46,178 nt of DNA from Macrostomum lignano (taxonomy: Eukaryota), in assembly GCA_002269645.1 (NCBI GenBank), contig NIVC01004431.1, positions 1-46,178 of the forward strand. Direction: 5' to 3'. The stretch's first letter is position 1. Each line of letters opens with the position of its first letter. Of the stretch, positions 1 through 38,870 are shown piece by piece. The notes under the pieces were generated by a model, which saw only the letters and a list, made by a program, of their open reading frames with translations, ran no database searches and was not told where the DNA came from. The position numbers and the translations under genes are program-made.

Positions 1-171
1 TCAGAGTTTTTTGCACATACTTATTGCAAAGCGCCATCGCTGAGTTCTCATTGGCCACGAGCTTTGTCTATGGCCAAATCCGACAGTTTGACGCTTCTTT
101 ATTTGTAAATTGTACAAATATCGCATATTGCCTGTCCAAAGTCTCAAAATCAAGTTTTATGAAGTCTATTT

Positions 172-650: not shown

Positions 651-753
651 AAATCACGGACTACTTAATTGTCGTTTATACTTAAGTAGTCCGTGAATCA
701 AATCTTATCAAATGTCAATTTAATCTAATCTAATTGAACCTCATCTCATTCAG

Positions 754-11526: not shown

Positions 11527-11531
11527 AGCCG

Positions 11532-11543
11532 CCGCTGCCACCA
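11532..11543 (-). promoter_or_regulatory. Primer binding site, tRNA-Leu-like
   Basis: TGGTGGCAGCGG lies 1 nt inside the 5' LTR and is complementary to ...CCGCTGCCACCA, the 3' end of metazoan tRNA-Leu(AAG/TAG). Confidence 0.75.
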
Positions 11544-11544
11544 A

Positions 11545-13252: not shown

Positions 13253-16200
13253 ATGTCCGAGAGGAGCAACGAAGCATCTGACGGCAGCGTCCGTCGCAGC
13301 TACCTGAATGAGTTCTGCAACTACACCACCGCCCACGGACTGGGCAGATTCGGGGCCCAGGCCAGCAACTTCGGCAGAACCCTGTGGCTCTGCTTCCTGC
13401 TGGGCACCTACGGCGGGTTCACCTACCACATGTACACCCTGGGCCTGCAGTTCGCCAGCGTGCCGCTCTCCACCAGCCTGTCCACCTCGCTGCCGTTCGA
13501 GTTTCCCGACGTGTACTTCTGTCCCACAGACACTGTGACCATGAGCCGAGCCAGTCCTCAGGTGGACATCTTTTCCCTGACCCGGCAGATCACCTGCGAC
13601 TCCGACTGCAAGCGACAGATGAAGTTCGACGTTTTCAGATCGGACGCCGTTCAGTACGGCGTGCCCGCCGTGGAGCTGCTGGATGCGATCACGGCTGTGG
13701 AAGAGAATGTGACTGATGCACTGCATTATGACAACACCTGTAAGTGTGCATTGAGTAGATAACAGAAGTGCACTCTTTGCCTTTCGGAAGGCCTGGAAGG
13801 AGGTCTTCATCGGCAGCGGCAGTGCTGAAGCCCAAATCATGCACATGAAATAAGATATAATGAAAATATGAAGTAAGAAATAATGGACACGAGGATTCCT
13901 GAACCATAGACAACTAAACTCGAAGGACGCAACACTCGAAAATACGAGGTAGTTCAGGGGGGTGTTTCTCGAAACTCACGTAAGTTCTATGGTAAGTTAG
14001 ATCGTAAGAAAGAAATTTACGTGTAGCGTAAGTTTGCTCGTAAGACGCTTTCTCAAAACTCACTTAGACTTTGCGTGGCTTACGCTGTTCGTAAGTCGTA
14101 TCTGAAACGAAAAGTTGCATGTCTATGGTCTTAAATCTGCAAATATCTTTACTTAGTCTGTCGTAAGTTGCTTCCGAGAAAGACCCACCTTCGATAAAGT
14201 TTAACTTGACTTGGCTTGACTAAAGCTTCACGTACTATGCGATTAGTGCTTAAGTGCGTCTTACGACTGATACCGAGCAGTCGTAGGGTTAAGATCAACC
14301 TTACGAAAGACCATAGACATACGAACGTTTTGAGAAACAGTCTTTTGCGCAAAGTTACGAACTCGTAAAGTTGCGATCAATCTTACGCATAGCTAACTTG
14401 CGAGCCTTTCGAGCAACCCGTTAGTGTAGCTTACCCAACTTACGTCTATGGTCGATCGTAAGTTGCTTTCGAGAAAGACCCCCCAGATTTCGCTGGAGAC
14501 TGGTTTTCGCTGCAACTTCGATGTCGAAGTTTTCAGTCTTAGACTTTCAGATTGCAAATGAAGCCAGTGTTGTAGTTTCCGCTACCGTCCGTGCGGACCG
14601 CAGACGGGGTGGTCGGGGTTCGGGTACTGCATGGACTGTCTAGAGCCTGCCGAGTGTGATAGGAGAGGACCCCTAGGCGCACAAACACTGCGGGGCGTAA
14701 GTGGATGGGCCGGGAGCGTACTGACACTCCTACAATCCTGCAAGAGGGAGGTGAGAGCCGGGCAAGGGCCGTGCGCGCGCATAAACACTGCAGCACTCAG
14801 TGAGAGCGGGGGCTGGGTGGGGCTTAGCCACGCGGGCTAAGGGGGGGGGGCAAAACTCACCGAGTTGAAGGGCAAAAGAGAGAGAGGGGAAGCCAATCCA
14901 GAGACATGATTGGACTGGCCCAACGAGAGAGGAACTGAAAGGGGCAGCCAATTTAAATACAAACTACGAGACATCTTAAACGAAAACAAGAATGGCAACT
15001 TCAGACAGAGGCAGTCTAGAATGAGCCAGCGGCAGAGAGAGGAGAGGCGGAGAGCGAAAGGGTCGGGCTATAAGGGCATTGTAAAGCGCAGCTGACAACA
15101 CAAGTTTGAGTTTCATTTGAGACACGTTCGTTGCTGTTTCATCCTGCCATCTTGGACAACTTCAGAGATTTGCAGACTGCCTGAAAAATCATTTTTCAAA
15201 AAACTTCCGACTGGTAATTTTCGTCCAGGCTTGTCCCGAACAGTCGGGGCAAGCATCAGGAGTATTTAGTAGTCCCTGAGTGCGGGTTTCTGTGTCGGTA
15301 CACGGGGTTTACGTCAGAACTCGGGACGGGACCTAGTCCGAGCCCTGGCGGTCTTTATTTTATCAAATTCGACCCCTCTTCCGTTGCAGTGCCTTTGAAC
15401 GTGTGCCGAAAAACTCCGGGTGGAGAAGAGTACCGCGGCAACCTGTCCCGGGTGCCCGTGTTTAATGCTTCCATCATTGTTGCAAAAATAAAAATGTACT
15501 TTCTGTTTTTTTATTATACACGTTTCCAGTGGAAAGACCAGCCGCCCCATGTGAGCTACAGCGACTGCATCGGCTGGAATGAGGCCGCCAGGGAGCTGCA
15601 GGCGGCCGGACTGCGCCAGCTGGCTGGAAGAATCTTCGCCGCTGGCTTCGCCGACAGCCACCGCAGCTGCAGGCAGCCAACCGGCCTGCCGCTCACCGCC
15701 TTCGACGACAATGCGACGCGTGAGTGGCAAGAGATGGCATTTTAAAAGTTCTACTTGTATCACGGATATGATAATAAATAGATTGGTGCGTAGTTCATTT
15801 GAAGCATTTTAATGTTCTTTCGGACATGACGGTGCTCCTGAACAGACATAGAGCAACTCAGGCTCACAAAATGCAGGCCAACTTTTTCCTGCGCACCTTC
15901 TCAAAGAAGAATCAAGACGCCAGCCCTTCGGAACGTCGAGATATTCAACGATTCACCCAGACACTTGGATTTTTCCATAAGTGCCAGTGCGTATCTCACT
16001 GCTGGGTATCCTCAACAAAGTTCACAAGAACTTCAGTCATCCCCCAAAGCTGTCGGCGTTTCAGCAGATGACACCAGGTGACAAAGTTCGAGTATCCGAG
16101 TATTAGGCTAACTCGTTGAATATCTCGACGGTCCGAAGGGCTGGCGACTTGATTCTTGCTTAGGAAGGTGCGCAGCAAAATTTTGACGTGTCCTCGAATT

Positions 16201-19200
16201 TCGTGCGTCTTAGTTCCGTGCGGCGCAGCAATAAAAAGGGCAATTCCTTCTTTGAATGAAAACTCACATTCCTACCTCCCAGCTTAACCCCTCCAATCCC
16301 AGCCTCACCGCCCAATCTTCATTGTCTGCTTCGGTGTTCCAGCCTCAAGCCTCTTTGCATATTTTTAGTTGTGCTGTCTGACGTACTCATAAATTACGTA
16401 CAGCTTCACTAATATATTTTAGTCTCGCTAAGATATTTACCGGTACGTCTCGTCAACAATAGCTGACGCATTATTCCTTGCTACTGAACTGAAAGCGGAT
16501 TTCTGCAACCGGGTGTTCAAATGCAGGTCCGCTGCAAACTTACGTCGGTTGCTTGCCCGCAAGCGACGCAGAAGGCACAGGGCTGCGGCAGCACAAGTGC
16601 CTGAGCGGCTTCATGTTTGACCAGCTCCGGCTCGGCCTGTGCGCAGAGTGCTGCTACAACGCTGCCTACAGCTACATGAGCCTGCTGGCTGGCGACACCT
16701 GCTACTGCGGCAACGAGCTGCCTGGCAACGATAGCCTCAAGCAGAAGAACTCTGCGTGCGGAGTTCGCTGCCCAGGAGATGCTAAGGAGATCTGCGGAGG
16801 CGAGAGAGCGCTCAGCGTCTATCTGGTGCGGAGTCTGGGTGAGCGTCACGAGTGCGTTTGTGCAATCCAGTTGTCAGTGCGCAAAATGAACACGACCTTC
16901 CATCGATTAAAATTGTGTCACTCTTTTCAAGACATTTTAAGTTGGAGATTAAGCAGTCCTGCTAAGCTTTCCTGAATCATTTCATATTCTGTATGTGCGT
17001 GGCATTATGGCTCATTTGCTAAGGCTGAGCTGCAGTTTGCCCTGCCGTCTGTGATGTTAGCTGTCACACCTTAGCACCTTACAACGGCGTATCTAGTCCT
17101 ACAGAAGACACTTGCGCAATGCACCCAATGCACATGTAATAGTTAATTACAATACGAGCGTTGTTTTTTAATGCATTCGATGCTCTGGCATGCGCAGGCA
17201 TTGATTAACTTTACTATTTCGATTTCTCACCTGCAGACCCCAAGCCTCTGTTCATCCCGTTCAGCCCCGCATTAGACAGCCTCAGAGTCGGGCCCTACTG
17301 CTTCTACAGAGCCGCTGGGGGCCGCCTGGGTGCCACCTACTGCAATGTGCCTTACTGCCGTGAGCACCGCTGTTTTTACCTGGGAATTTGTTAATTTTTC
17401 AGTCATTACAGTTACAACTTCTTAGTATATAAAATTAGCAATACAATTACGAGCAATAAGTTTTCAGCAGTTTTTGTAAAACTGCTAATTAATTAAACTT
17501 TGTAATTACAAAAATTTTCAACAATTTTTGTAATCGACTCAACAGTCCTTATATTAATAGCATAGGCACACAACCGGCGAGAGGCATTACTGCCCATTCC
17601 GCCGACTCCACTGAGCAGGCAAACAAGCGCGTGGCTACGTACGCAGGCACACACTCACACAGGAGTGTAAATGGACCCTAACTTTATTTATCGTTAGGCA
17701 CGTAAACTTCCCTGAGCCTTGGGGGTTGTTCATTAAGGGCGTTAATTGCACGAGCAGAGCTAAGCCGAGAATTCAATTTAGCCTCGTCGTAGTCGTAGAC
17801 GTCGTAGTGTGACTGTACCTGGAATCGATACCGAGCCACTGATACATCAGAGCGCCCCACTAGACCACTAGGCTGTGCCCCCACCCATATTGATGATCGA
17901 TTCGACCTTTAGCCCTTGACCAAATACTTGCCAGGCCTCAAAGCTTTGATACTCTGGCCTTATACAAGAAACTACAAGTGACCAAAAGCTACTTTTTCTA
18001 GTTTACCTGTTGAGCGCCAATAGTTTTGGTCATATCAAGCAGATATTTCTTAGCGTTGAAGGAGCGACTACTCTGAGCTACTTAAGTCCTTTGTTGCAAT
18101 CCGACAGCTAGCTACAAAAGGTCAAAAATTAAAACTAATTCAACAATTGCAGCAAGACGGCATTGTTTTAACTTCATGACTTGTTTTCCGCATTCCCACA
18201 GCCATTTCCTCATCCTTCGACTGTCTATCCAGCAGCAACGATGGCTCCATCAGTGATTCGCAGTACCTACGCTACACCGGCCACAGATCCAAGACCAAGA
18301 CTCGCGACAACTGCCTCAACTGGTCTGATTTAGAAACCACATTTTTAGGCCAGTGGAATTCTTTCAAATTAAGTTTCAGATTGCTTTCCTACGATGTGAG
18401 AATGAGTAAGTTTTTATTGCAAGACGTGTTCAGAAAAAATAATTAGAGTGCTACTGACAGTGCGCACTAGAAATGTATAAGTGACTTTAGAAAAACTCTG
18501 CACCACTGGAGGTTTTCTGCAAGAAACCACCGGAAAAAACAGCCTCATCTACAAAAACACAAAAACCAACAACCACCACAATCAGTGCTGGGCGCCGCCG
18601 AAGCAGGTCACTTGGGTCAGGTCAGCGTGACGGTTGAGTGCGGCGTTGCTGACTCAATCGTCAACTTATTAGCGTTTCAAAGCTGAGATAATAACACTTT
18701 ACAAGCGGTACACAGATATGCACCCAGCGGGTCAGGAGTATTTCAATCTATTTCAGTTACTCTCCAACTCAACTAAACTCAATGGACAGAAATTTTATTA
18801 TACAGCAAAGCCACAAAAACTTTACAACTTTCGCAGTTGAAATAAAAAAAATGTACGTTGAGACTCCGGACTACAGCTTGTACACGAACAAGACGGGAAA
18901 CTTCTGCCGGGCTGCCAGGGTGGTTATTGATGCCTTCGTCTATAAGACCGGCAGATCTGATGGGTACTACTTTATGTGAGTATTGACGGGCGTTCTTGGA
19001 GTATCGCGATTGTCAGTAGAGGTTCCCAGTCCAGACTCAACTGTCGTTTTGAGCACACAGAATCCAGATATGAAGGTCTAGAACTAGAAATTCGAACAGG
19101 AAGCAGAGCTCTGTCACCAGCAATTTTCTTTACAACATTTAAGGCCATTAAATGTTCCTTAAGTAAGACCTTGCCCGAGTAAGTCTAAAGAGACAAAATT

Positions 19201-22200
19201 GCGAATCTGCTAGCTTAGATTAGTTGAATTTTCCACACTCCATACCAATAATAATAATAAATTGAATCCGCGTTAATGGGCAGATGTGCAACCAACAGCT
19301 CAGCCGCAGCTATTGCCGGCGAATCTGAAGGCTGCATGCGGCTGTTGAGTCCAAAGACTGGAGGGTCGCCACACACACCCTTAGTTACCCCAGCTGTTGG
19401 CTACCATTTTACAGCTGGGTGAACTGAAGCAATACAAAGTTAAATTTCCTGCTCAATGACACCAATTATTTCGAATCTGTAGAGAATCGATCTCCCGACC
19501 GTTCAGTCGTGAAACCGACGCTTTAACCACTAGGCTAGGACGCCCCTATTACATTCAATACATTTCTTAATGTTATACCAATATTTAATAGCTTTACGTG
19601 TCTTTTTTGTTTCATTGGATGCACGAGCCTTCATTTTTTAAAAATTGCGAAAGTCACAAGTTCCCCACACACCCAGCCGTCACCAGATTGTCAAATCCGA
19701 TACTCCTGTCTGCTTCGTCATGATCAACCAGAGAAGTGCGATCCTGGGCGCCTGCAGAGTGGACGCCTGCTGTGAGTGGTTTTATTGATTTAATTTGCTA
19801 GAAAGGCGGGATTCCATTCAAGGTTGATCGATACAAGTCTTTTCAAGCCAAGTCAAGGTCGTTACAAGCCTTTAAACCTTCATGAATTTAGTGAGTATTC
19901 AGTTAAGGCGCTGGGCACTGCCGCTAATCAAGGAGACAGCCAGAGTGAACGCAAGCAGTCATGTCCATACCGCAGACCCCTGAGCATGCACACGCTCACA
20001 CAGGGTGCACAGCAGCCCTGCTTGTCTAATCGTCAGGCGGTAGAACATTCTGTGCCCTGGGGTTGGCACACGGAATCAAATCTGGGTACTCTGGCGCGAG
20101 AGTCAGACACGGTAGCCGCCGAACTACTGAGCCCCAAAGCTCATGGCTAGGTTCAAAGCCTTATTCAATTTCGTGATTGATTCGAACTGATCCTGAGACG
20201 CTGCCGCAACCAAAATCTCTTACGCCAGCCCGAGTGACGCAGAGCATCCCCGGCCTGGTGCGGGACCAGGTGGGCAACGCCCTGCTGGCCAGCCGGTTCG
20301 GCAGCAGCATCGGCATCGGCTTCACTGGCTGCTCTTTCGGCAACCAGGCCTGTACAATGGAGGACTTCACCACCCTGCTGCACCCGGAGCTCGGACTGTG
20401 CCACCGGTTCAACCAGGAAAAGTTCGTCGGGCTCACCAAAGATCTCAAGGCCACGGAATCGTTGCTGTCTTTTAATTACTTCACCGACTCTACAGACTCC
20501 AAGGGCCGGCGGCTGCCCGGTCTGAGCCGGATGGCCAAAGTGATTTTTCCCGGACTGGTCGACGCGAATGACGACACGCTGAGCGCCATGAAGGCAAGAA
20601 CTTTGTCCCAAAACTTGCGGCAAACTTGCGTAAGCCGCTTAAATAGTACTGCCTGAATAGAGATATAAAAATATTGTAAGAGCCGAGAATTTAGAGTCAA
20701 CTCACGAAGTATATTTGGCATGCACGATAACTGGGGAGCGATTATAATAGTCCGCGATAGAAAGGTTATAAAAGGACTCACCCAACTGGGGTGGTGGCAT
20801 GCACAGAGTAAAGCGAGATGCAAGTGTTGTAACCCGGGTCGGTTTGGGTGCCCAGTCCCGAGTACAATATATATTATACGTAAGATACAGGCGTAGTGAC
20901 GCTCTGTCTGTACTTTTATGGATACGAGCAGGCGTGCGACGCTCTGCGATAATAGTTCGATCCCTCTGGTGTTGTGACACTCAGAGTTCACGCTGCGGCT
21001 CGGGGTGTGGTGACACTCTCGAGTGCTTCTAGTCTCAATACTGTAGGTTGTACACACTATATAGAGTAGACGGTACAATACTACAAAAAGCTATATGATC
21101 TCCCGGCGTTATGACGCTCTGGCAAGAACTCGGCCTAACAAGCTCCCAGAAAAGAACGAACTCAAGCAGCAGGCGGCTTACCAGTGGCCAAATCGCCGTT
21201 ACGTTTATTGATTCGCTCGTGCAGGTTCTAACTTCCAAGATTCTTCTCAAGGCTCTTCTGTTTCTTTTCTCGTATTCAATAGCTAGAATTGCTGTTTAAC
21301 GGTCTAGTCTCGCACTTGTACTCTCCGAGCACACCAATTCAAAACACAAAACAGCACGAACAGAACAAACAGAACAAACAGAGCAAACAGAGCAAACAGA
21401 GAAAACCGAGCGAAGGGCGTGAGCAAGGCCCAGAGCCGCATTAAATAATAATCAAACCCTGGGGCAGATGGCCCCACCGGCTAAGCCCAACCAAACAAGC
21501 TACCCCAACAAAATAGAGACTGACCGCGCCGGCCAGCCAATCAAAACCCCGCCTAGGGGGGAGGGGCCGCACCCGCGCCAAAGCTGGCCCGGCCGCAGCC
21601 AACCAGCCCTGAGCACGGGGCAGGGGCACGGCTGGGGAGGGGCACGCGCAAAGCCCGGCCGGCGGCCAGACCCTGCCACGCCCGCCAACCCCCCCCCCCC
21701 AACCAGACCCAAAGTGCAACGCGCCCTGCCAACTGACAGAGCAGCCCCCACCCCAACTCCACAAATCAAACGCAACCTCACAATATTAACGAACTAGACT
21801 AGAAATGGTGGGCAGGGCGCTCATGACTCAGAAAATGGAGTATAGAGCGAGAAAAAACGTTTCCGCAATAGCAAGTAACTACAACAGGGGCTTATGGTTT
21901 GTTCCAGACCAGTTACTTCCAATTGAAATGAATAATGGCAGCCCGAAACCCTCCAGGTGATTCTGGTTCCTAAGGGCCAGTTTCCCTGGCGAGAAAACGC
22001 CATCACCGCCAGCCCGGGCCAGCACCTGCAGCTGAACATTCGCTTCGACAAGCTGAACAGGTATTCGAAGCCTCCAACGCAGGAGTGCCGTCCGCCCGCG
22101 GGGCCCACAGTCTACCGGATTCCCTCGTGGCGCACCAGCTGGAACTACTCAAGTCCTGAGTTGTGAGCTTGAATTTTCTGTTTAGCATTGCACAGCCTTT

Positions 22201-23357
22201 GAACTGACAAGCAGAGCAAAAACGTCTTGAATTAAAATCTCCAGAGATTCATTCAATATGACGACTACAATTTCCTCACTGAACTGGTCAGCAAAGCTCC
22301 AGACTTTACGAGGCCGGCTGAGGACTGTAAATAGCAGCATGTAAGTTCCTCTCTTGCAGGGCATTGCTGCTCTCAGCTTTCGCTTTGCCCTTTTCTGCTT
22401 AAACTTATTCCATTGCGACTTGCAGCAGTCCGATGAGCGAAAACTTGACATTCGAGATGCAAGATCAGCGCGACTGCGTCAACCTGTATGCGGTGAAGAA
22501 GTTCATCGAACACTGCGGCTGTCTGCCCTCGTTTCTTCCTGTTCCGGTGCAGCTCTTCCAGAACTACACCTACTGCTTCAACCAGACAGACATGGAGAGC
22601 ATCAAGAGGATGGAGAAGTGTTACACAGAGCGAATGAGCTCAATATCGCGTTACGAAATGGAAGCCCGCCAGGTCTGCCTAACGATGTGCAACACTCGCT
22701 TCTACACTTTCCGACCCATCACCTACCCGTGGCCCGGCCTGACCATCGAGACAGCGGTGGACTTCATGCAGAACAGCCAAGGGGACTGGTCCTACCCCTA
22801 CAACTTCCTGTTCTCCAAAGGCATCGCGAATCTGTTCTACCTGGACATCCGGAGTAGCGAAATGTACAACCGCTCAACGATGCTCTCGGCCTCTGAGCTG
22901 CTCGATTTTAGAAACAAGCTGGAAGTTTTGCAGGAGAGCCTGGTCAAGGTGTCAATCAAGCCGGTCAGCGACTTCGGACAGGAGATGACGGAAGAGCCTT
23001 CTTACACCATCAAGAATCTGCTGGCCGACCTTGGCGGTGAGCATTTCAAAGCTACCGTGTTATGCTGTCATTTGCAGTTCCGAACAATGGCTAATATGTA
23101 AGCATTTTTTAGGCGCTCTCGGTCTCTGGTCCGGCATCTCAGTTCTCACCGCGTGTGAGCTGATTGAGCTGCTGGTCTACCTGGTGGCAGCGACTCGACG
23201 TACAGAGCAGCCCACCCAGCCGTCAGGGCCTGCGACTGGCAACGCTGAGCAGCAAGACAGCGGCGAGATGAAAGCTGACGACTCAGCCACTGAGGTTGAA
23301 ATGACAGACAAAATGACAGACATTGCAGCACCTGAGGTCTCCATCTCGGTTCCTTGA
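13253..23357 (+). CDS. DEG/ENaC channel paralogue B with a kringle[WSC]-kringle extracellular insert; 11 exons, 1038 aa
   Basis: Exons 13253-13739, 15390-15719, 16527-16838, 17237-17359, 18202-18405, 18837-18975, 19677-19771, 20229-20593, 21957-22162, 22426-23036 and 23113-23357 join in frame (3117 nt). Motifs: EFCNYTTAHG (HG), TM1, FPDVYFC, GCSFGNQAC...GLCHRFN, thumb cysteines, [16 protein letters not shown] (TM2). Confidence 0.9.
13958..14483. mobile_element. MITE, PIF/Harbinger-like, in intron 1 of gene B
   Basis: Terminal inverted repeats GGGGGT(G/C)TTTCTCGAAA, 3-bp direct repeat CAG on both sides, many internal CGTAAG/CTTACG motifs, no coding capacity. Confidence 0.7.
15390..15719 (+). 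CDS. Gene B exon 2: N-terminal half of kringle 1
   Basis: C...GEEYRG..S...CIGW...SCRQP matches kringle C1-YRG-C2W-C3RNP; phase 1-1 exon. Confidence 0.75.
16527..16838 (+). CDS. Gene B exon 3: WSC domain
   Basis: YVGC...CAECCYNAAYSYMSL...CYCGN...CGVRCPGDAKEICGG..ALSVY; phase 1-1 exon. Confidence 0.9.
17237..17359 (+). CDS. Gene B exon 4: C-terminal half of kringle 1
   Basis: DPKPLFIPFSPALDSLRVGPYCFYRAAGGRLGATYCNVPYC matches kringle PWC...YCxVPxC; not in the supplied ORF track. Confidence 0.8.
17561..17882 (-). mobile_element. SINE family A copy (intron 4 of gene B)
   Basis: Aligns by eye with 12239-12595 over most of its length. Confidence 0.8.
18202..19771 (+). CDS. Gene B exons 5-7: kringle 2
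   Basis: FDC...YTGHRSKTKTRDNCLNW (18202-18405), GNFCR (18837-18975), PVCFV...GACRVDAC (19677-19771): six cysteines in kringle spacing. Confidence 0.75.
19250..19545 (-). mobile_element. SINE family B copy (intron 6 of gene B)
   Basis: Reverse complement of 5551-5860 with (TTA)n tail. Confidence 0.78.
19955..20145 (-). mobile_element. Degenerate SINE, family A-related
   Basis: Shares CCCTGAGCA..CACAC.CTCACACAGG.TG.ACAGC.GCCCT and a tRNA-like head; more diverged than other copies. Confidence 0.45.
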
Positions 23358-27381: not shown

Positions 27382-30300
27382 TTAAACACAATCGGAAATC
27401 GAGACTGGGTTCTCGTGCTCACTCTGCCGGGGTGCGCCGTTCTCTGACACTTGGGTGTGACCGAGCTTCTGCTGCAGAGCGATGGCCAGGTACACCAACA
27501 GCTCTATCAGCTCGCATGCCGTCAGGACCGACACCCCGACCACAGACCGAGAGCACCTGGTGGATGGGGAACAGATGATGTCAATTTTTCCCCAGCCCTT
27601 GCATCAGAGCAAGTCACAGCGTAAAATTTTTAACCAAGCACAGATGACCTCGGCTACAGACACGTGCACACTGCGCCCTGGGGTCGTCCTTACGTGAATC
27701 GAAATTTTCGTGTACCAGACATTGGCATGGGAGTCTAAAGCGTAAACAACTGAGCCAAAACAGCCGGTCTAGTTATTGAGACATGAATATTTTGGGATAC
27801 CGTGACTGACTGACACAATTTGACTTCTATCAATTTGACTGCCGATGACATTTGACTACCCACGATTTAGGTCAGGTCTAGGGTTAGAATTGGGTCAGCA
27901 GTCAACTCGCTGCAGTCAATTGTCGTAGACTCATCCATTGTAAGGAGCTGAGTCACTTGATCTCTATTTGCCCATACATTTCCCAAACTAAATCTATACC
28001 AGGTGGCTTGGTGCAACTCTTCTGACTTACCGCCTAAATCAGCCAATAGGTTCTTGCTTGTGTACGAAGGCTCCTCCTTGATCTCCTGACCGTACAGACT
28101 CGAAGCCTGCACAGTAACTCTGACAAAGTTCTTTTCAATCAGACTGAGATTTTCTGTGAGCTCCTTGACGGCCGTTGCCTTGTTAATACTGCCGTCTACA
28201 GAGGTGTCCATCTGGCTCACCAGTCTGGAGAAATAGTTTAGTCCAAATAGAGTTGAAATTCCCTCGGAGCCGAGAAAGTTGTTCGGATAATTCCAATCGA
28301 AGAGGTGGCTCTGGAAGAAATCGTGAGCATTCAGCGTGGATATCTCTGGCCACCGATAGCTGGCCAGCTTCACAGAGTAGCTGCGAGTTTCGCACAGGGG
28401 GACGCAGGCTTGGCGAGCGCTTTTCTGCAGTGAGGCCAGCTGTTCAATCTGGCTCTGGTAGCACTGCTCCACTGAGCCAATGCCCTCTAGCGAGGTCACA
28501 TTGAAGCACTGCTTGACCTCGGGCGGGAACGCGCCCACTCGGACAGGCAGGAACAGCGGGAGGCAGCTGCAGTTCTCAAGGAATCGGCGCGCAACGAACT
28601 CGTCTATGCAGTCGTCCACAGTGCTGGCTGCGAATCGCATGGTCGGGCTGATTGCCGATCTGAAACGGGTTGAAGATTGGCTCAGTAATGAAAAATTCCA
28701 GGACATTTTTGGTTATAAATTTTTCTGAAATCGATCACATAGATTCGTATAGGACTAGTATATAGGACTAGCAAGCAGCGAAAATTCTTTACTTTTGACA
28801 CAAGATCGACCTAAATTTGCGATGCTTAACAAATCTCTTGATCGATTTTTGTTGACAACCGTTTGATTTTAGCTAGCAAAAGTAGCTGAATTAATATGCA
28901 AAGGGGATGTCAACTTAAGCACCAGAATGGAGCCCGAAGTTCAGCTCCGGCCCAAACCGACTGCAATCGATAACTTGTCGGCCCAGACGACTAGAATCGC
29001 CGAGACATCCCATCCGGCTCCCTTCCTTGGGGTCCCAGGGGATAAAGGGGATAAAATGGCGATTCTAGTCGTCTGGGCCGACAAGTTATCGATTGCAGTC
29101 GGTTTGGGCCGGAGCTGAACTTCGGGCTTCATTCTGGTGCTTAAGTTGACATCCCCTTTGTTTTTTAGAGTTTCTTTACAGCTATAGGGCGAGTATTTCA
29201 GTAGCTAAGTGAAAGCTCTAATATTTTAGAAGTCTACTTTTCAAAGACGCACCTTCCGTTGGTTTGTCCTTCGAGCATTTCACGAAGCAGATCCGTCCTC
29301 TCCATCCAATCGGAGGCTGATTGAAATGCTGTATAGTTCACATTCTCTCTGTAATTCGTTTTGTAGCATTTCTGGAGTAATCCTTTGGAAGTAGTTGAAA
29401 AATTGATATTGGCAGGAGGGCTGCAAGCCCCGACGTGGCACAACTCTATCGACGAATTGTACAGCCAGCGGGGAGGCAATTCTGCCATTCGCCAATACTG
29501 TACGCATAGGGTGTACACCCGCCCTGACTCTAATCGTCAGGTATGTGCACTATCTGTGGCCTGAACTTGATGACTGAGAGCAGGGGGGCCGTAGCCCAGC
29601 GGTCTAGCGCAGGTTCTGGTGTGCCAGCGACCCAGGCTCGATTCCAAGTGCAGTCACATTAATTTGGGGCTGAATTGGAATCTCGGCTTGGCTCTGCTCG
29701 TGCAATTAACGGCTTTGACAGCCAACCCCCCAAGGCGCAGTGAAGTGTACATGCCTAACGATAATATAAAGTTAGGGCCGCTGTACACTCCTGTGTGAGT
29801 GTGTGCCTGCGTACGTATCCGCGCGCTTGTATGCCTGCTCAGGGGAGTCGGCGGAATGGGCAGTAATGCCTCTCGCCGGTTGTGTGCCTATGTCGCTTAA
29901 AGTGCGCCAGGGTGCACAAAATCCCCTGCCTCTAATAAAAAAAAGATGATCGAGAGCAATTGGCACCGCAGCTCACCTTCTATTCTTATCAAACAGCCGA
30001 AGCGAGGACTTCCAATTCGGCAGAACGTATTCCACAGGCTGGGCCGAGGCAGCGCATTCTTTATCGGTCAGCTTCGAGTATCGAACGGTTCGATCGTATC
30101 GGATCATGAGCCTCATGTGCTGGCCAGGACCCACGGTGACTGTGTCTTGAGGCCTGGGATATTGCCCCGGTGGCACTATAATCACCTGTAGATATAGAAA
30201 TAGTTGTGCTATTGACTGGATTTTACTGGGGATTGAGCTTAATAATGTCAGGTTTCTTGCATGCAGCAGTAGTCTTTCTATTATTGCTTTCATTTCAGCT

Positions 30301-33300
30301 CACTTGTCCCAACGGGTCAACAAAGAAGTAAAAGAAAATTAAAATGACCCGCAATTTGTTCATTTTGAATAGTCCTTGATAAAAATGACCTGACTACATC
30401 CTGGGTTATATCGAAGATAAATGTGTTTAAAAGTTTTTTGAATTTTACTGACCTTCATCGCTACTTTCTCGTCAGCTTCCAGTGCCCAGTGCGAAAGCGC
30501 GTTAGTCAGGAGTTTCGTGCCAGCGAACTGGCGGCCGCGACTGTCCGTCGCATCCGTGAAGTAGTTAATCACGAGTTCTGTGTCGTCGACATTAGAAGAT
30601 TCTGAGTTAATTAACCTGGCTCCGCCCTGATTGAACCGATGGCAGACGCCCAGATTCGGATGATGCAGTGTTGTGAAGTTTTCCATGCGGCAGCGGCGAC
30701 GACCGAGGCGGCAACCGCTGAGTCCGATGCCCAGATTGCTGCCGAACCTGCTGAGTAGCAGCTCAGCTCCAACTCGGCTCATTACAACAGAATACTGACA
30801 GCCGAGAACATTGTCTGCATAAATAGTTTTTAATGGAACATTAAGTCTGAAAGCTATCTTAGCCCAACCTAAACTCACTACGGAGAATGTCTTAGGCTAC
30901 CTTAGAATTTCCTAAATCGAAGTCTTCCTGCCTAAAAGTGCAAGAAACTGCTAAAAGCGCATTTTTAGCTACGAGACGACAGAGAGCAGAAATGGGAGAC
31001 AAGAGAGGAGAGGAGAAGAGATGAGACGAGAGAGAGAGGAGAGAGAAGACGGGAGAGAGAAACGAGAAGAGAGTGGAGAGATTAGAGAGGAGAGAGGAGA
31101 GATCGTTTCAAAAGCCCCAAATTATAATGTTGTACACCGATCCGAATCCAATGTACTTTTATTTTCAGTCGTTGCCCCAGCGTTTAATTTATTTGTCTGT
31201 GTCCCAAGCAGCTACCGACTGACTCTATTAAGGCTTGCCTCGACTTATATCGTTTTAAACAAAATATAAATGCAACTTAAGCCACGCTCTTCGGCTCAAC
31301 GCAGTGTCAACGCATAAAATGCAACATTCAATTTACCAAAATTTACTCTAAGCTTTTTTACCTCTATCCTAACTTAACGACTACTAGACACTAAGTGTTC
31401 GTAGTGGTCCTTGTTCTAACTACTCGTTTTCACAAGTTTTTGTCGTAGCATGGCTTCAGATTTAAGATATAAAGAAAAACAAAAACATTAGAAATAGTAG
31501 AAATACTTTAGAAATAGTTCCGGGGATTGAAATTCAAGCAGGTAAAATACCCGCGGGTTTCAACAGCTTGTCTTTTATAAGATCCCGGGGTTTACGCTCT
31601 GTCCCGCTAAAAAAAGCAATGACAGCTGCTGACTGGCCTTGCAGCAACCCTCCTGGCTTACAGCAGAGCGGAATGCTGCAGTGTCCGATGCGGGCCTCGC
31701 CAGACTTTGCATAGGCGCAAGCAGCGCTGGAGAACTCGTGGATCTTGCGGCTGAAATGAAAAAATACAACTTCTGCTTAACGATATTTAACAGATGCACG
31801 GTGGGGATCGACTCCCTCGTTAGGCCGGTTCGATTCTGTGTGGGTGTTAGCAAAGCCGTGGTTGCACAAAGCCAGCCGTGATCCTGCCTCCCCGGTGTTG
31901 AGAATGCGGAGCACTTCATCTGTGAATGCCCGGTCTTTACTCAGGACAGGCTCACCTACTTCGGCCCAAACTCGTACCCTTGGAAATTTTCAGGCCCAAG
32001 AATCTCTGCCAGCTCGTCCGCTACCTAAGGGCTACCGGGCGAGCGACCATCCCCTTCCTGGACTCTCCGAAGGGGAACCACGCTGCTGTCACCGGCACCT
32101 CCGGATCTCCCTGCACGAGCTGCCCGTGGTCCCCAGGGGTTAGCGGAATGGGCGTCGACGCCTCCCCGCTGCATCCAGATGCCCACAGCCACCTGCGTCT
32201 GAGTCAAGTCCAACGACCATGCTCGAAGTTTTTATTAGAGGCAGGGGGCTTTGTGCACGATAACACACTTTAGGCGACATTGTCACACAACCGGCAAGAG
32301 ATTACTGCCATTCCGCCGACTCCCTGAGCAGGCACACAAGCGTGTGGATACGTACGCAGTCATACGCACAGGCACACACTCACACAGGAGTGTACAGTGG
32401 CCCAGACTTTATTTATCGTCAGGCATGTACACTTCATTGTGCTTTGGGGGTTGGCCCTCAAGGGCGTCAATTGCAGGAGCAGACCCGAGCTAAGATTTCA
32501 GTTAAGTCCCAGATAAATGTGAAATTTGAAATCGAGCCTGGGCTATAGAATTTGTATAGACATGAATACGCCGAATAAAAAAATCAACTTATATCACCCA
32601 TCGATCGAAATGAGTTTGGCTGAAGCTGCAACCATTTTCTACATTGTTGTTTGACCCAAAACTTGTCTGGACAGGGTCCTGGGATTTGCTGTCTATTTTA
32701 ATATAGTCTGTGGACTGTAACATAGTTTGGAAGACTTTGAAATCACATGTAAGAGTACATCCCCAACTCGCATGTAAGAGTACACTCCCGACTCACATGT
32801 AAGAGTACACTCCCGACTCACATGAAAGAGTACATCCCCAACTCACATGTAAGAGTACATCCCCAACTCACATGTAAGAGTACACTCCCGACTCACATGA
32901 AAGAGTACATCCCCAACTCACATGTAAGAGTACACTCCCGACTCACATGTAAGAGTACACTCCCGACTCACATGTAAGAGTACACTCCCGACTCACATGT
33001 AAGAGTACACTCCCAACTCACATGTAAGAGTACACTCCCGACTCACATGTAAGAGTACACTCCCGACTCACATGTAAGAGTACACTCCCGACTCACATGT
33101 AAGAGTACACTCCCAACTCACATGTAAGAGTACACTCCCGACTCACATGTAAGAGTACACTCCCGACTCACATGTAAGAGTACACTCCCGACTCACATGT
33201 AAGAGTACACTCCCGACTCACATGTAAGAGTACACTCCCGACTCACATGTAAGAGTACACCTCCGACTCAAACTCGTAGACAATCAAGTCAGCGACCAGG

Positions 33301-36059
33301 CGAACGGCTCGGCAGTGGTTGTAGGGCACCGGGCTGCAGTCTCTCATTTGGTAGTCTGGTGTCTCTACGTCCAGACTCACCACTCGAGCTAAACTCGAAG
33401 CGGAGGGCATAAAAATGAATTCAATGGAATTCGAAATTGAATGCTAAAAAACTCGTCTACTGTCAGGTGAGTTTCTTACCTACTCTATTCGCAGAGTATC
33501 TGATGTCCCAGGTGTAGTTCAAATTCCCGGAAAGCACAAGCACCCTGAAGCTGCGCCAGTCCATGCAGCCTTCGCCGCTTTCCGTAAAGTTCACGAAGCC
33601 GGAGTACCTCGCTATTTGAAGGTCGTCTGCTTGAGAAGCATCATTTGTCCGCAGACAGTCGTTGTCATGCGACATTTCTGAAGCCCAAAATTGTTTTATT
33701 GGATTTTGAGGGGCTGCTCTGTTTAGAGTACACAATATTTGAATGCACTCGTGTCCTCACGGCAGTAGGGTATGTTGCAGTAGGACGCAGACAGACTGTT
33801 TCTGGCGTCCCTAAAAAAGCAGTACGGCCCATTGCTCAGGCCTGCCAGGTTGGGCCTGAACGGCAGTACGAAACCCGGAACGCTGCCTGAGTGAAAAAAG
33901 AGTGAACGTCAAGCTGAGGAATTCTCCACTTATCCTCGGTACTACTCATGGCTTACCAAGAGCAATGACTCTGTACACAGACAAGTAGGCTTCGCTTCCA
34001 TCGCCTCCGCCACAGATCTGGTTGAGATGTCCCGGACACTTTTCAGTGCAAGAATTGTCCGCGTTGGTATCGAGGTAATCTTTCCGGTCAGAAACTATTC
34101 GATCGGAGCAATAGCAAGCGAACCGATGCACCCCGGCGTAAGGAAACTGCTTGTTGTAGCAGCACTGCCGGCACATGGTCACCGTCATGACATTGAACTT
34201 GGTCTCAATGCAAGTTTCATTCTCCTGCCAGGCCCTCAGTCCAATGCAACCGACGAACTCCGATACCGGATCTGCCATTTTTACGACTGTGGTGTCATGA
34301 CAAAGCTGAAAGCTTGAATAGCCATACTGTGACCAAACAACTCACAGGTAAAATTTTGCTTTAGAGCCGTCAACGGCAGATTGGGAGGCTGCCTGCAGCT
34401 GCGGTCGGTGTCAGCGAAGCCTGCACTGAAAACTCTGCCAGCCAGCTGGTCCAGGCCCGCAGCTTGCAGCTCCCTAGCGGCCTCGTTCCAGCCGATGCAG
34501 CTGGTGAGTGTCACATGGGGTTTGGCTGGCGCAGTCGTGAGGGCGACATTCCTGAATTCTACAAAGAGACTTTCGTAGACGGGGACCACGGAGAGGCTGC
34601 CTGTGTATTCTTCGCCAGCCGCTGTGACACGACAGGTGTCGCTAGAAGCTGGAGAGAGGCGTGTCGGCGCGAGAATATTTTTATGGCGAGTTTTGAGAAT
34701 CAAAACAGAAACAGGCATAGGGTCGAAAATTTGGTTTGTTGAAACTATCTTATGAGCTTTTATGGTAAAATAGACTTATTTTATGCTCTCCCTAAATGGG
34801 ATGTCAAATTAAGCACCGGAATGCAGTCTAAAGTAAAGCGGAACAAAACCAACTGGAATCAAACTGGCTGGCATGTCATGTCTAGTTCGGAGCTTTGCTT
34901 GTAAGTCCATTGTGTTGCTTAATTAACCCGGCATTCCTTTCGATGCCTGCCTGCACTGTTTAAAGCAAGCGGCCCCGTGTCGTCATTCGGCCGCGCACCG
35001 ATACTAAAATTATGCGTCCGATGCTGTAAACATAAACGCTGTTTACAGCATCGGAAAACAAAGCATCATGGAGTTTATGAGTATCAACTGAAACCATTTT
35101 CTGCTCTGGTTCTGGATGTTAGGTTGATTCACTAGCTCACATTTTTGTTCAAGAGTCTTGACTGCCTTTCTGCTCTCGACATGTGAATGGAATATTAACA
35201 TTGATTCCTTTGTGAATTTGTGATCCTTCTACAAAGTAGGATACACTGCCACTCAAATGATTGATTGCTAGGATGGAAAGTAAAATTGATTCTTTGGATA
35301 ATTGGATCAGTTTCTCGACCTTTTAGACTATAGTTTTGTTTTATTACTACAAGCCCGTCAGGCACTCGTCACACCAAACATACCCTTCAGTTGACGACCA
35401 ATACTGGCACGAGAAATTCTAAGTCTAGATGACCTTCCAACGCGCTCTTATTGAGGTTTACCTCCTTGAAATTACGAGCTTAGACTGGGAAAATGTGTCT
35501 AAGAAAACATAAATGCAGCTTAGTCCAGTTGATTTTCATTCAATTCAAACGTCAATAGAATTTTCTCACTTGTATTGCCATATTGCAGCTCGTTCAGGAC
35601 GGCCTCCTCTGCTGAGATGACAGTATTGAGCAGAGCCTCTGTGCTAGCACTGTAGCTGACTTTAGAATTGATCTCGAACAGTAATTTTCTCAGAACGCAC
35701 TCGCTGCTGCAAAGACTGTTTCTTAATATTTCGTTGGTGTCAATTGGTGCGGCCAGCCGGCTCATGGTCACGGTGTCTGTTGGACAGATGTACACGTCGG
35801 GAAACTCGAACGGCAGCGAGGTGGATAGGCTGGTGGAGAGCGGCACGCTGGCGAAATGCAGGCCCAGGGTGTATATGTGGTAGGTGAAGCCGCCGTAGGT
35901 GCCCAGCAGGAAGCAGAGCCACAGGGTTTTGCCGAAGGTGCTGGCCTGGGCCCCGAATCTGCCCAGTCCGTGGGCGGTTGTGTAGTTGCAGAACTGCGTC
36001 AAGGAGCTGCGGACTCCGTCGCTGGACTGGGAAGATTTCTCCAAGCCCGATTTCTCCAT
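27382..36059 (-). CDS. DEG/ENaC channel paralogue C with the same kringle[WSC]-kringle insert; two apparent lesions (possible pseudogene or assembly errors)
   Basis: Exons 36059-35570, 34648-34346, 34271-33957 (WSC), 33886-33761, 33677-33480, about 32707-32562 (uncertain), 31750-31662, 30814-30453, 30185-29977, 28659-28031 and 27556-27382. Intron positions and phases match gene B. 1-nt deletion in TM2 at 27534-27537 and in-frame TAA at 32591-32589. Confidence 0.85.
28899..29160. mobile_element. Fold-back/MITE-like inverted repeat (103-bp arms, 56-bp loop)
   Basis: 28899-29001 is the reverse complement of 29058-29160 with one mismatch; explains the mirror ORFs at 28927 and 29132. No TSD seen. 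Confidence 0.85.
29583..29943 (+). mobile_element. SINE family A, full length
   Basis: A/B-box head, poly(A) tail, imperfect direct repeat GATGACTGAGAGCA / GATGATCGAGAGCA. Confidence 0.85.
30975..31083. repeat. GA-rich low-complexity microsatellite
   Basis: Degenerate (GAGAG/GA)n tract. Confidence 0.8.
31885..32215 (+). mobile_element. LINE 3' fragment, second copy
   Basis: ENAEHFICECPVFTQDRLTYFGPN then [19 protein letters not shown]; same family as 1460-1790. Confidence 0.65.
32229..32545 (-). mobile_element. SINE family A copy, 5' truncated
   Basis: Body and tail match 12239-12595; stops at the B-box region. Confidence 0.75.
32747..33268. repeat. 25-bp minisatellite (CATGTAAGAGTACACTCCCGACTCA)n
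   Basis: About 21 near-identical tandem units in intron 5 of gene C; no unique spacers. Confidence 0.95.
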
Positions 36060-38719: not shown

Positions 38720-38870
38720 AACCTCAAGCATTTGCTGTTCCATCAGTTATTCACTGCTGTTCGGTAGGTGCTCTCAATGAACCGAGATGGAGACCTCAGC
38801 TGCTGCAATGTCTGTCATTTTGTCTGTCATTTCAACCTCAGTGGCTGAGTCGTCAGCTTTCATCTCGCCG
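38720..38870 (-). pseudogene. Orphan inverted copy of the gene B C-terminus plus 3' UTR
   Basis: 151 bp matching 23261-23411 at roughly 90-95% by eye (GEMKADDSATEVEMTDKMTDIAA(P/A)EVSISV(P/H)*); no TM2-coding sequence precedes it. Confidence 0.8.

What the first reader, a model, noticed from the sequence alone, without database searches (positions are those of the whole stretch)
13253..23357. DEG/ENaC ion channel carrying an extracellular kringle-WSC-kringle module
Seen in sequence: 11 exons splice in frame into a 1038-aa protein with all core DEG/ENaC motifs (HG, TM1, FPxVxxC, GxCxxFN, thumb cysteines, ADLGG, GLWSGIS). Exons 2-7 add about 400 aa between FPDVYFC and the beta-ball cysteines, with two six-cysteine kringles and one WSC domain. 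Established knowledge: this position is the finger domain, the variable gating region (peptide site in FaNaC, protease-released inhibitory tract in ENaC); kringles bind proteins/lysine; WSC domains are putative glycan binders, and the two co-occur in Kremen receptors. Inference: a receptor-channel fusion gated by a protein, glycan or matrix tether. I do not recall this architecture being described, but could not check.
Basis: partly seen in the sequence, partly recalled or inferred. Interest (0 to 1): 0.92.

Follow-up and report, generated by a model that had tools for sequence, protein, structure and literature searches.

The report
Flatworm sodium channel with kringle/WSC insert
This is a real gene of the flatworm Macrostomum lignano for a DEG/ENaC-type sodium channel whose outer "finger" region carries about 385 extra residues (a WSC domain nested inside one kringle-like domain, then a second kringle-like domain), an architecture found only in this species' gene family and never studied, which could act as a built-in anchor or ligand sensor.

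Summary
Pfam confirms ASC (E 9e-38) and WSC (E 8e-11). Both kringles fail Pfam's threshold, but profile comparisons support them as divergent kringles: hhalign 94-95% against reference kringles versus under 0.2% for cysteine-rich controls, and the K2 family profile hits almost only kringle chains in the PDB.

The topology is not kringle-WSC-kringle in series. The WSC domain is one phase 1-1 exon inserted between Cys3 and Cys4 of kringle 1, and kringle 2 follows. The module replaces about 60 finger residues of FaNaC/ASIC5 with about 470.

The organism is Macrostomum lignano. The window holds three clustered paralogues, and the genome has at least six lineages. All 22 module cysteines are conserved at about 30% identity. 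Full-length paralogue ORFs in GenBank come from RNA-seq-based annotation. An exhaustive HMMER search found the whole module only in M. lignano. No paper describes it.

Function is inferred: a ligand- or matrix-binding appendage coupled to gating. I rate it a new variant of a known kind, of moderate-to-high interest.

The parts
13253..13739 (+). Exon 1 (aa 1-162): cytoplasmic N-terminus with HG motif, TM1, FPDVYFC, and the first helical part of the finger. Ends in phase 1 at a GTAAGT donor.
   Evidence: 64-68% identity to P0001
15390..15457 (+). Exon 2 (aa 163-185): start of kringle 1 with Cys1 (NVCRKTPGGEEYRGN). An alternative donor lies at 15451.
   Evidence: P0045 supports the junction ...NLSRVP|WKDQ
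15530..15719 (+). Exon 3 (aa 186-248): kringle 1 Cys2 (CIGW) and Cys3 (SCRQP). Ends in phase 1 (GTGAGT).
16527..16838 (+). Exon 4 (aa 249-352): a complete WSC domain (10 Cys, CGG motif) on one symmetric phase 1-1 exon of 312 nt, inserted between Cys3 and Cys4 of kringle 1.
   Evidence: Pfam WSC E 7.6e-11. Foldseek to yeast Wsc1 7pz2, TM 0.74, and to Kremen1. Same exon boundaries and phases in paralogue L001 and in the minus-strand paralogue.
17237..17359 (+). Exon 5 (aa 353-393): C-terminal half of kringle 1 (GPYCFY, YCNVPYC = Cys4-6), phase 1-1.
18202..18405 (+). Exon 6 (aa 394-461): kringle 2 Cys1 and Cys2 (DCLSS...YLRYTG...NCLNW).
   Evidence: (junction confirmed by P0003)
18837..18975 (+). 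Exon 7 (aa 462-507): kringle 2 long loop and Cys3 (NFCRAA).
19677..19771 (+). Exon 8 (aa 508-539): kringle 2 Cys4-6 (PVCF...GACRVDAC). Ends in phase 1.
20229..20593 (+). Exon 9 (aa 540-661): return to the channel body, with the alpha3-like helix and beta-ball cysteines (GCSFGNQAC...GLCHRFN). GC donor at 20594; an alternative GT donor follows 20629.
   Evidence: (donor position conserved in L001)
21957..22162 (+). Exon 10 (aa 662-729): palm/beta-ball strands (VILVPKGQFPW...).
22245..22340 (+). Exon 11 (aa 730-761): extracellular linker with N-glycosylation sequons.
22426..23036 (+). Exon 12 (aa 762-965): thumb cysteines, palm, wrist, ADLGG.
23113..23357 (+). Exon 13 (aa 966-1046): TM2 (GLWSGISVLTACELIELL), cytoplasmic C-terminus, TGA stop.
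   Evidence: aligns to FaNaC GLWMGISVLTIMELMEL
27427..36065 (-). Second, apparently complete paralogue with the same TM1 / K1N / WSC / K1C / K2 / channel / TM2 order and the same phase-1 exon boundaries around WSC.
   Evidence: UniProt fragment P0010 maps here at 92-98% identity
748..3614 (+). 3' part (palm/thumb/TM2) of a third paralogue whose 5' end lies off the window.

Best explanation
Identity (shown). Window 13253-23357 is a protein-coding gene of Macrostomum lignano for a DEG/ENaC (ASC-family) channel subunit. Its finger domain has been enlarged by an exon-shuffled, disulfide-rich module of about 385 residues: a divergent kringle (K1) that is itself interrupted between Cys3 and Cys4 by a complete WSC/PAN-like domain, followed by a second divergent kringle (K2). 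Every module boundary is a phase-1 intron. The gene belongs to a tandemly clustered, lineage-restricted paralogue family.

Mechanism (inferred). The subunit assembles like other DEG/ENaCs into a trimeric, FaNaC-like cation pore. The three K1[WSC]-K2 modules project from the finger, which is the region that in relatives binds peptides (FaNaC) or carries protease-released inhibitory tracts (ENaC) and communicates with the thumb to gate the pore. My preferred reading is as follows. K1 is as conserved as the channel core and is the scaffold packed on the channel. The faster-evolving WSC and K2 surfaces bind an extracellular macromolecule. That binding, most likely to glycan-rich matrix or mucus as a built-in tether, is transmitted through the finger to modulate or mechanically gate the channel. 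Paralogues would differ in partner.
For: Gene and channel:
- 13 in-frame exons with GT/GC-AG junctions.
- An exact 365-aa match to UniProt A0A1I8H6Q0.
- Pfam ASC 130.9 bits against a cut-off of 23.6.
- The closest solved chains are FaNaC 7yvb (9e-13), ASIC5 and ENaC, with an identical GLW-GISVLT pore motif.

WSC:
- Pfam 42.5 bits against a cut-off of 27.8.
- AF2 plus Foldseek: top hits are the yeast Wsc1 mechanosensor domain (TM 0.74, rmsd 2.6 A) and Kremen1.

Kringles:
- The K2 family profile against PDB sequences returns almost only kringle chains, with best E 4.6e-7.
- hhalign against nine reference kringles gives K2 95.2% (E 2.8e-8) and K1 with WSC excised 94.0% (E 1.5e-7), with the cysteines aligned in register.
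- Negative controls: WSC against kringle 0.05%, and K1 against WSC 0.19%.
- UniProt names the K2 fragment of a paralogue a 'Kringle domain-containing protein'.

Nesting:
- The WSC domain is one 312-nt phase 1-1 exon flanked by the K1 halves in the focal gene, in L001 and in the minus-strand paralogue.

Constraint:
- All 22 module cysteines are conserved across paralogues at 25-56% identity. K1 is as conserved as the channel core, while WSC and K2 are less conserved.

Transcription:
- The full-length paralogue ORFs P0001, P0157 and P0153 come from GenBank annotation built from RNA-seq transcript assemblies.

Mechanistic context:
- The Kremen1 KR+WSC pair forms one rigid ligand-binding unit (PMC5014086).
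- WSC/PAN domains mediate protein and carbohydrate binding, and Wsc1 is a wall mechanosensor (PMC9024836).
- ENaC shear sensing needs extracellular tethers to the matrix (PMC6955349).
Against: - There are no functional data at all.
- There is no direct transcript evidence for the focal gene itself; only paralogues and a gene-prediction fragment support it.
- Both kringles fail Pfam's gathering score.
- K1 alone gives only E about 0.7 against PDB sequences.
- AF2 models were low-confidence (pLDDT 58.6 for the insert, 42.9 for the full length). Neither the kringle folds, nor the reunion of the K1 halves, nor the position of the module on the channel could be seen.
- The canonical kringle lysine-binding residues are absent.
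- One paralogue lineage (P0157/P0007) has a degenerate WSC that Pfam no longer detects. That argues against a strictly WSC-dependent mechanism in all members.
- C. elegans EGAS channels, the nearest precedent, gave no currents in oocytes.
Confidence: 0.55

Rival explanations
1. The module is a receptor for a soluble secreted protein or peptide, a Kremen-like KR+WSC binding surface. The channel is then ligand-gated or ligand-modulated rather than tethered. The paralogue expansion would reflect different ligands.
For: In Kremen1 the DKK1 interface is formed jointly by the KR and WSC domains. The finger is the peptide site in FaNaC, which is the closest solved relative. WSC and K2 evolve faster than K1 and the core, as expected for diversifying ligand specificity.
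Against: No candidate ligand is known. The module is nested, not the serial KR-WSC of Kremen, and shares no specific similarity to Kremen beyond domain type. WSC and PAN domains bind carbohydrates at least as often as proteins.
Confidence: 0.25
2. The module has no gating role. It serves folding, assembly, localisation or clustering (for example anchoring the channel at cilia, adhesive organs or epidermal mucus) or protection of the ectodomain.
For: Wsc1's cysteine-rich domain is proposed to drive sensor clustering. One lineage tolerates a degenerate WSC. The module is large and glycosylated, with sequons at aa 180, 246, 316, 433 and 479.
Against: The insertion sits precisely in the gating-relevant finger rather than at a terminus or a peripheral loop. 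K1 is conserved as strongly as the channel core.
Confidence: 0.15
3. The cysteine-rich regions called K1 and K2 are not kringle homologues but a novel flatworm cysteine-rich fold that mimics kringle cysteine spacing.
For: Pfam Kringle scores are 13-23 bits against a cut-off of 34.3. The K1 profile gives only E about 0.7 against the PDB. AF2 predicts long beta hairpins and helices in the loops and gives no Foldseek kringle hit apart from Kremen chains. The loops are much longer than in any canonical kringle.
Against: hhalign gives 94-95% with all aligned cysteines in register, while cysteine-rich controls give under 0.2%. Nearly all PDB hits of the K2 profile are kringles. The signature motifs YxG, CxxW, (N)xCRxP, GPYCF and YCxxPxC are conserved. 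UniProt's automatic annotation calls K2 a kringle.
Confidence: 0.1
4. Annotation artefact or pseudogene: the insert exons belong to another gene, or the focal copy is a decaying duplicate.
For: The focal gene is represented in protein databases only by fragments (P0003, P0045). Exon 9 needs a GC donor. M. lignano is highly duplicated. A stray duplicated C-terminal fragment lies at 38780-38902.
Against: The 3141-nt ORF is uninterrupted across 13 exons, with all motifs and cysteines intact. The same contiguous architecture occurs in three transcript-derived full-length paralogues. There is no separate start, stop or signal peptide for the insert. The GC donor has a strong AAG|GCAAGA context at the position where paralogues have GT.
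Confidence: 0.04

Closest known systems
FMRFamide-gated sodium channel FaNaC (Aplysia 7yvb; Malacoceros FaNaC1 8on7)
   Same: It is the closest solved relative by sequence (E 9e-13). The topology, HG motif, beta-ball and thumb cysteines are the same, and the TM2 motif GLW-GISVLT--EL-EL is nearly identical. The finger is its ligand-sensing region.
   Different: The FaNaC finger has about 58 residues where this protein has about 470. It has no WSC or kringle. Peptide gating was not tested for this family. The three M. lignano DEG/ENaCs tested by Dandamudi et al. (Mlig049925, 051885, 041003; no peptide response) are different genes.
Kremen1/2 (Kringle-WSC-CUB Wnt/Dickkopf co-receptors)
   Same: It is the only well-studied animal protein family that combines a kringle with a WSC domain. 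There the two pack into one rigid ligand-binding unit. Kremen1 chains are the second-best Foldseek hits.
   Different: Kremen has the domains in series plus a CUB domain and a single-pass TM. Here WSC is nested inside the kringle, a second kringle follows, there is no CUB, and the host is an ion channel. There is no specific sequence affinity to Kremen in the exhaustive search.
C. elegans EGAS-1..4 (EGF plus ASC domain channels)
   Same: They are a precedent for DEG/ENaC subunits carrying an added adhesive, cysteine-rich extracellular module. They are also functionally uncharacterised, with no currents in oocytes (PMC10424705).
   Different: The module type differs (EGF) and, as far as I know, it is not placed inside the finger (from memory, not checked). 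The phylum is different, so the acquisition was independent.
ENaC alpha/gamma finger (GRIP domain with protease-released inhibitory tracts) and glycan-tether model of ENaC shear sensing
   Same: In both, an expanded, lineage-specific finger insertion controls gating. An extracellular tether to the matrix is needed for the force response (PMC6955349).
   Different: The ENaC insertion is a short beta-rich peptide tract, not autonomous domains. In ENaC the channel's own N-glycans are the tether, whereas here the channel would carry the lectin-like or protein-binding domain itself.
Yeast Wsc1 cell-wall integrity sensor; polycystin-1 (WSC-containing mechanosensory receptor, from established knowledge)
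   Same: The WSC/PAN-type domain at the tip of a membrane protein is implicated in sensing mechanical stress through contact with extracellular polymers. The Wsc1 domain is the best structural match, and the CGG motif is conserved.
   Different: Those are single- or multi-pass receptors signalling through cytoplasmic partners, not pore-forming DEG/ENaC subunits.

Membership tests
DEG/ENaC (Pfam ASC, PF00858) | Profile match above the curated threshold | tested here: met
   130.9 bits, E 8.9e-38, cut-off 23.6, split into three stretches by the insert
DEG/ENaC (Pfam ASC, PF00858) | Two TM segments flanking a large ectodomain, a pre-TM1 HG motif, a post-TM1 FPxVTxC motif, and a TM2 G-x-S motif | tested here: met
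   TTAHGLGRF aa 25-33, hydrophobic aa 43-65, FPDVYFC 84-90, GLWSGISVLTACELIELL 969-986 aligned to FaNaC and ASIC5 TM2. The TM segments were read from the sequence, not from a TM predictor.
DEG/ENaC (Pfam ASC, PF00858) | Conserved ectodomain cysteines (beta-ball, thumb) | tested here: met
   GCSFGNQAC...GLCHRFN aligns to FaNaC 209-238 and ASIC5 184-217. The thumb motif CGCLPSFLP aligns to ASIC5. Conserved in all paralogues.
DEG/ENaC (Pfam ASC, PF00858) | Channel fold / trimeric amiloride-sensitive cation channel | tested here: inconclusive
   The full-length AF2 model had pLDDT 42.9 and was not usable.
WSC domain (PF01822) | Profile match above the curated threshold | tested here: met
   42.5 bits, E 7.6e-11, cut-off 27.8, covering profile positions 1-82 of 82
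WSC domain (PF01822) | PAN/apple-like WSC fold | tested here: met
   Foldseek: Wsc1 7pz2 E 4e-4, TM(target) 0.74, rmsd 2.6 A over about 100 residues; Kremen1 5fws/5fwu/5fwv prob 0.99-1.0. Local pLDDT was about 70-80.
WSC domain (PF01822) | Carbohydrate or protein binding | not testable with these tools
   Needs a glycan array or pull-down
Kringle (PF00051) | Profile match above the curated threshold | tested here: not met
   K2 18.4 bits (E 0.0028) and K1 with WSC excised 13.1 bits (E 0.12), against a cut-off of 34.3. Paralogues score 14-23 bits.
Kringle (PF00051) | Six cysteines in kringle register with the flanking signature motifs (YxG, CxxW, xCRxP, PWC/PYC, C-x-x-P-x-C) | tested here: met
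   Invariant in six paralogues for both K1 and K2. Aligned in register to reference kringles. The 1-6/2-4/3-5 connectivity itself is not testable here.
Kringle (PF00051) | Remote homology by profile methods, with controls | tested here: met
   hhalign 95.2% (K2) and 94.0% (K1) against controls of 0.05% and 0.19%. The K2 profile hits HGF, tPA, ROR1/2, prothrombin and plasminogen kringles, E 4.6e-7 to 1e-2.
Kringle (PF00051) | Kringle 3D fold | tested here: inconclusive
   AF2 pLDDT was mostly under 70 in K1 and K2. There was no independent kringle hit in Foldseek.
Kringle (PF00051) | Canonical lysine-binding site (acidic D-x-D after CRNP plus aromatic Trp/Tyr) | tested here: not met
   K1 has CRQPTGLPL and K2 has CRAARVVID at that position
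Kremen family | Serial KR-WSC-CUB ectodomain on a single-pass TM protein | tested here: not met
   There is no CUB hit, WSC is nested in K1, and the host is a two-TM channel
FaNaC (peptide-gated DEG/ENaC) | Activation by FMRFamide-type peptides | not testable with these tools
   Only sequence proximity is shown. Other M. lignano DEG/ENaCs tested in the literature did not respond.
EGAS (EGF plus ASC) | EGF domain(s) fused to ASC | tested here: not met
   No EGF family hit in Pfam at E up to 10

The most novel reading that the evidence does not exclude
A naturally 'self-tethered' DEG/ENaC: the channel carries its own matrix-, glycan- or protein-binding domains (a WSC nested in a kringle, plus a second kringle) in the gating finger. 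Force or ligand binding at the module would then be transmitted directly to the pore. The clustered paralogues would form a repertoire of sensors with different extracellular partners. It would also be the first documented case of a domain inserted inside a kringle.
Probability: 0.3. Interest if true: 0.85.

Novelty: new variant of a known kind. Interest (0 to 1): 0.6.

Why it matters
How DEG/ENaC channels are coupled to extracellular matrix or ligands is a long-standing question. Tethers are inferred for MEC-4 and ENaC but are structurally undefined.

A channel that has fused candidate tether or receptor domains into its own finger would give a single-polypeptide system. In it the tether can be deleted, swapped between paralogues or titrated with ligand. 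M. lignano is transgenic- and RNAi-tractable.

The nested WSC-in-kringle, bounded throughout by phase-1 introns, is also a clean example of exon shuffling into an intra-domain intron of an ion-channel gene.

If the module proves irrelevant to gating, the finding reduces to a lineage-specific decoration of modest interest.

Tried and rejected
I built the model by hand and then with tblastn guidance instead.
- Earlier exon choices were replaced. Model A/B had exon 6 ending at 18372 and exon 2 ending at 15451. P0003 and P0045 showed the better junctions.
- I looked for a K1 C-terminal half between 15720 and 16526, and for a K2 N-terminal half between 16839 and 17236, which would have rescued a serial K-WSC-K order. 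Neither exists. That interval holds only an inverted-repeat element.
- The spliced window protein could not be submitted to the representative search, the structure prediction or the contig look-up. I used P0001, P0003 and P0045 substrings instead.
- Both homologous-protein searches returned only M. lignano clusters, so they gave no outgroup.
- AF2 of the insert (pLDDT 58.6) resolved only WSC. AF2 of the full-length P0001 (pLDDT 42.9) was unusable and was not sent to Foldseek.
- The K1 profile against the PDB was nearly empty.
- Literature searches found nothing for degenerin plus kringle domain, ENaC plus kringle plus WSC, or the Mlig gene identifiers.
- I did not attempt dN/dS, because paralogues are too diverged and no homeologue DNA was available.

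Full report
**1. Is it there?**

The window is eukaryotic, with short ORF islands separated by introns. I read splice sites directly. I then guided the model with tblastn of the only strong database hit, P0001 (Macrostomum lignano BOX15_Mlig007204g1, 1052 aa).

This gave a + strand gene of 13 coding exons, from ATG 13253 to TGA 23355-23357, encoding 1046 aa.

- A 365-aa UniProt fragment (P0003 = A0A1I8H6Q0) is an exact substring of my model over exons 4-9, which independently validates those junctions.
- P0045 supports the exon 1-2-3 junctions.
- Two junctions stay ambiguous. The exon 2 donor is at 15451 or 15457. Exon 9 uses either a GC donor (AAG|GCAAGA at 20594) or a GT donor 36 nt downstream. 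The GC position is the one where both paralogues examined have a canonical GT.

**2. What is the organism and the family?**

Exact look-ups show the proteins are from Macrostomum lignano. I ran an exhaustive HMMER search of the 393-aa insert of P0001 against 1.84 billion representative proteins. It found 510 hits at E up to 0.001. Among the 150 hits listed, only M. lignano proteins cover the whole insert; the others match only the WSC part, query positions about 100-210.

- At least six paralogue lineages exist: P0001; the focal gene; P0005/P0153; P0007/P0157; P0004/P0006; P0068; and P0010.
- Three family members lie in this one window. They are a 3' fragment at 748-3614 (+), the focal gene, and a complete inverted copy at about 36065-27427 (-) with the same domain order and the same exon phases around WSC.

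**3. Channel part**

Pfam ASC scores 130.9 bits (E 8.9e-38). The closest solved chains are FaNaC (7yvb, 9e-13), ASIC5, FaNaC1 and ENaC. The HG motif, TM1, FPDVYFC, beta-ball and thumb cysteines, ADLGG and a FaNaC-like TM2 (GLWSGISVLTACELIELL) are all present.

Query aa 17-99 and 573-602 align to FaNaC 67-151 and 209-238. About 470 residues therefore sit where FaNaC has about 58 and ASIC5 about 69.

**4. The insert**

Exon 4 alone encodes a complete WSC domain (Pfam E 7.6e-11). In an AlphaFold model of the P0001 insert, this was the only well-predicted part. It matched the yeast Wsc1 mechanosensor domain (TM 0.74) and Kremen1.

The flanking cysteine-rich sequences fail Pfam's kringle threshold, at 13-23 bits against 34.3. 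More sensitive tests support kringle homology:

| Test | Result |
|---|---|
| Profile of six paralogous K2 segments vs PDB sequences | Almost only kringle chains (HGF, tPA K2, ROR1/2, prothrombin, plasminogen, apo(a)); best E 4.6e-7 |
| hhalign, K2 vs nine reference kringles | 95.2%, E 2.8e-8 |
| hhalign, K1 with WSC excised vs nine reference kringles | 94.0%, E 1.5e-7; aligned across kringle columns 4-78 with the aligned cysteines in register |
| Control: family WSC profile vs kringles | 0.05% |
| Control: K1 vs WSC | 0.19% |
| hhalign, K1 vs K2 | 42.7%, E 2.5e-4 |

UniProt's automatic annotation independently labels the K2 fragment of a paralogue a kringle. Taken alone, K1 is weak against the PDB: two hits, both kringles, E about 0.7.

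**5. Topology**

Kringle 1's Cys1-3 lie in exons 2-3, and its Cys4-6 (GPYCFY...YCNVPYC) in exon 5. The WSC exon sits between them, inside the loop that in canonical kringles is the short CRNPDxD...PWC segment.

No alternative K1 C-half or K2 N-half exists in the neighbouring introns. The module is therefore K1[WSC]-K2, a nested architecture, not K-WSC-K in series.

Every module boundary is a phase-1 intron: exon 1|2, 3|4, 4|5, 5|6 and 8|9. The WSC exon boundaries and phases are identical in two paralogues. This is the classic signature of class 1-1 exon shuffling (established knowledge, Patthy), here into an intra-kringle intron. Because exon 4 is 312 nt and symmetric, skipping it would restore an uninterrupted kringle in frame. 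That is a testable possibility for which I have no evidence.

**6. Is it functional?**

- All 22 cysteines of the module and the signature motifs are invariant across paralogues that share only 23-56% identity in these regions.
- K1 is as conserved as the channel ectodomain. WSC and K2 diverge faster.
- GenBank's M. lignano annotation derives from RNA-seq-based transcript assemblies with TransDecoder ORFs (PMC5730564). The full-length paralogue proteins (P0001 1052 aa, P0157 1033 aa, P0153 1091 aa) therefore show that TM1, module, channel body and TM2 are in one mRNA.
- I have no direct transcript evidence for the focal copy.

**7. Mechanism (inference)**

The finger is the ligand- and modulator-sensing region of the family (FaNaC peptide site, ENaC inhibitory tracts; established knowledge). 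The relevant comparisons are:

- In Kremen1 the KR and WSC domains form one rigid unit that jointly binds DKK1 (PMC5014086).
- WSC/PAN domains bind proteins or carbohydrates, and Wsc1 senses wall stress (PMC9024836).
- ENaC shear sensing requires tethers between channel and matrix (PMC6955349).

I therefore favour a binding appendage coupled to gating, most likely a built-in matrix or glycan tether (about 0.35). A soluble protein ligand site comes next (about 0.25), then a non-gating localisation or assembly role (about 0.15).

The canonical kringle lysine-binding motif is absent, so lysine or fibrin-type binding should not be assumed. One paralogue lineage has a degenerate WSC.

**8. Novelty**

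I found no paper combining degenerin or ENaC with kringle or WSC, and none naming these genes. The M. lignano DEG/ENaCs tested electrophysiologically by others are different genes.

The proteins already sit in public databases as uncharacterised entries. C. elegans EGAS channels (EGF plus ASC) are a precedent for module-bearing DEG/ENaCs. I therefore classify this as a new variant of a known kind.

**9. Limits**

- AF2 was uninformative for the kringles and for the whole channel.
- The search tools gave no outgroup species.
- The spliced window protein could not be submitted to several tools.

Noticed in passing
window 27427-36065 (- strand): A second, apparently complete kringle/WSC DEG/ENaC paralogue in inverted orientation. 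It is 62% identical to the focal gene in the TM1 exon, 56-57% in the K1 halves, and only 27-31% in WSC and K2. The phase-1 exon boundaries around WSC are the same. UniProt fragment A0A1I8HZ70 (P0010) maps here.
   Followed up: partly
window 748-3614 (+ strand): The 3' part (palm, thumb, TM2) of a third family member. Its 5' exons lie beyond the left edge of the window, so this is a tandem/inverted cluster of three paralogues within 46 kb.
   Followed up: partly
window 6718-11544 (- strand): A Ty3/gypsy-type LTR retrotransposon between the first and second paralogues, with long open gag (Retrotrans_gag, zf-CCHC), aspartyl protease and RT-RNaseH-integrase ORFs (Pfam). LTRs were not mapped.
   Followed up: partly
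window 38780-38902 (- strand): An isolated fragment 78% identical to the last 41 residues of the focal protein's C-terminal tail. It looks like a stray duplicated piece of exon 13.
   Followed up: no
window 39353-41202 (- strand), GC about 60%: Exons of an unrelated gene. The 314-aa ORF matches the HEAT-repeat domain of proteasome adaptor ECM29 (Pfam E 8.8e-25).
   Followed up: partly
window 43105-43900 and 44943-45617: Two coding-looking tandem repeat arrays: about 11 copies of a 10-residue unit (MQRPILGPCG), and repeats of about 30 residues (GMLQWEPLPFLRDASVGAATLPQGCFSGSRYPSS). They were seen in the ORF list.
   Followed up: no
window about 15800-16320 (intron 3 of the focal gene): An inverted-repeat element whose two arms translate to similar peptides on opposite strands (FLRTFSKKNQDASPSERRDIQRF / MLRTFLSKNQVASPSDRRDIQRV). 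It is possibly a MITE-like insertion.
   Followed up: no
window 20594 (exon 9 donor): A probable GC-AG intron (AAG|GCAAGA) at a position where two paralogues have canonical GT donors. An in-frame GT donor 36 nt downstream would add 12 residues.
   Followed up: partly
window 15452-15529 (intron 2): The start of this short intron reads through in frame as ...RVPVFNAS..., which resembles the exonic sequence SVPVFGNS of paralogue P0005. In paralogue L001, K1N is a single exon. The intron may therefore be a recent gain within formerly coding sequence.
   Followed up: no
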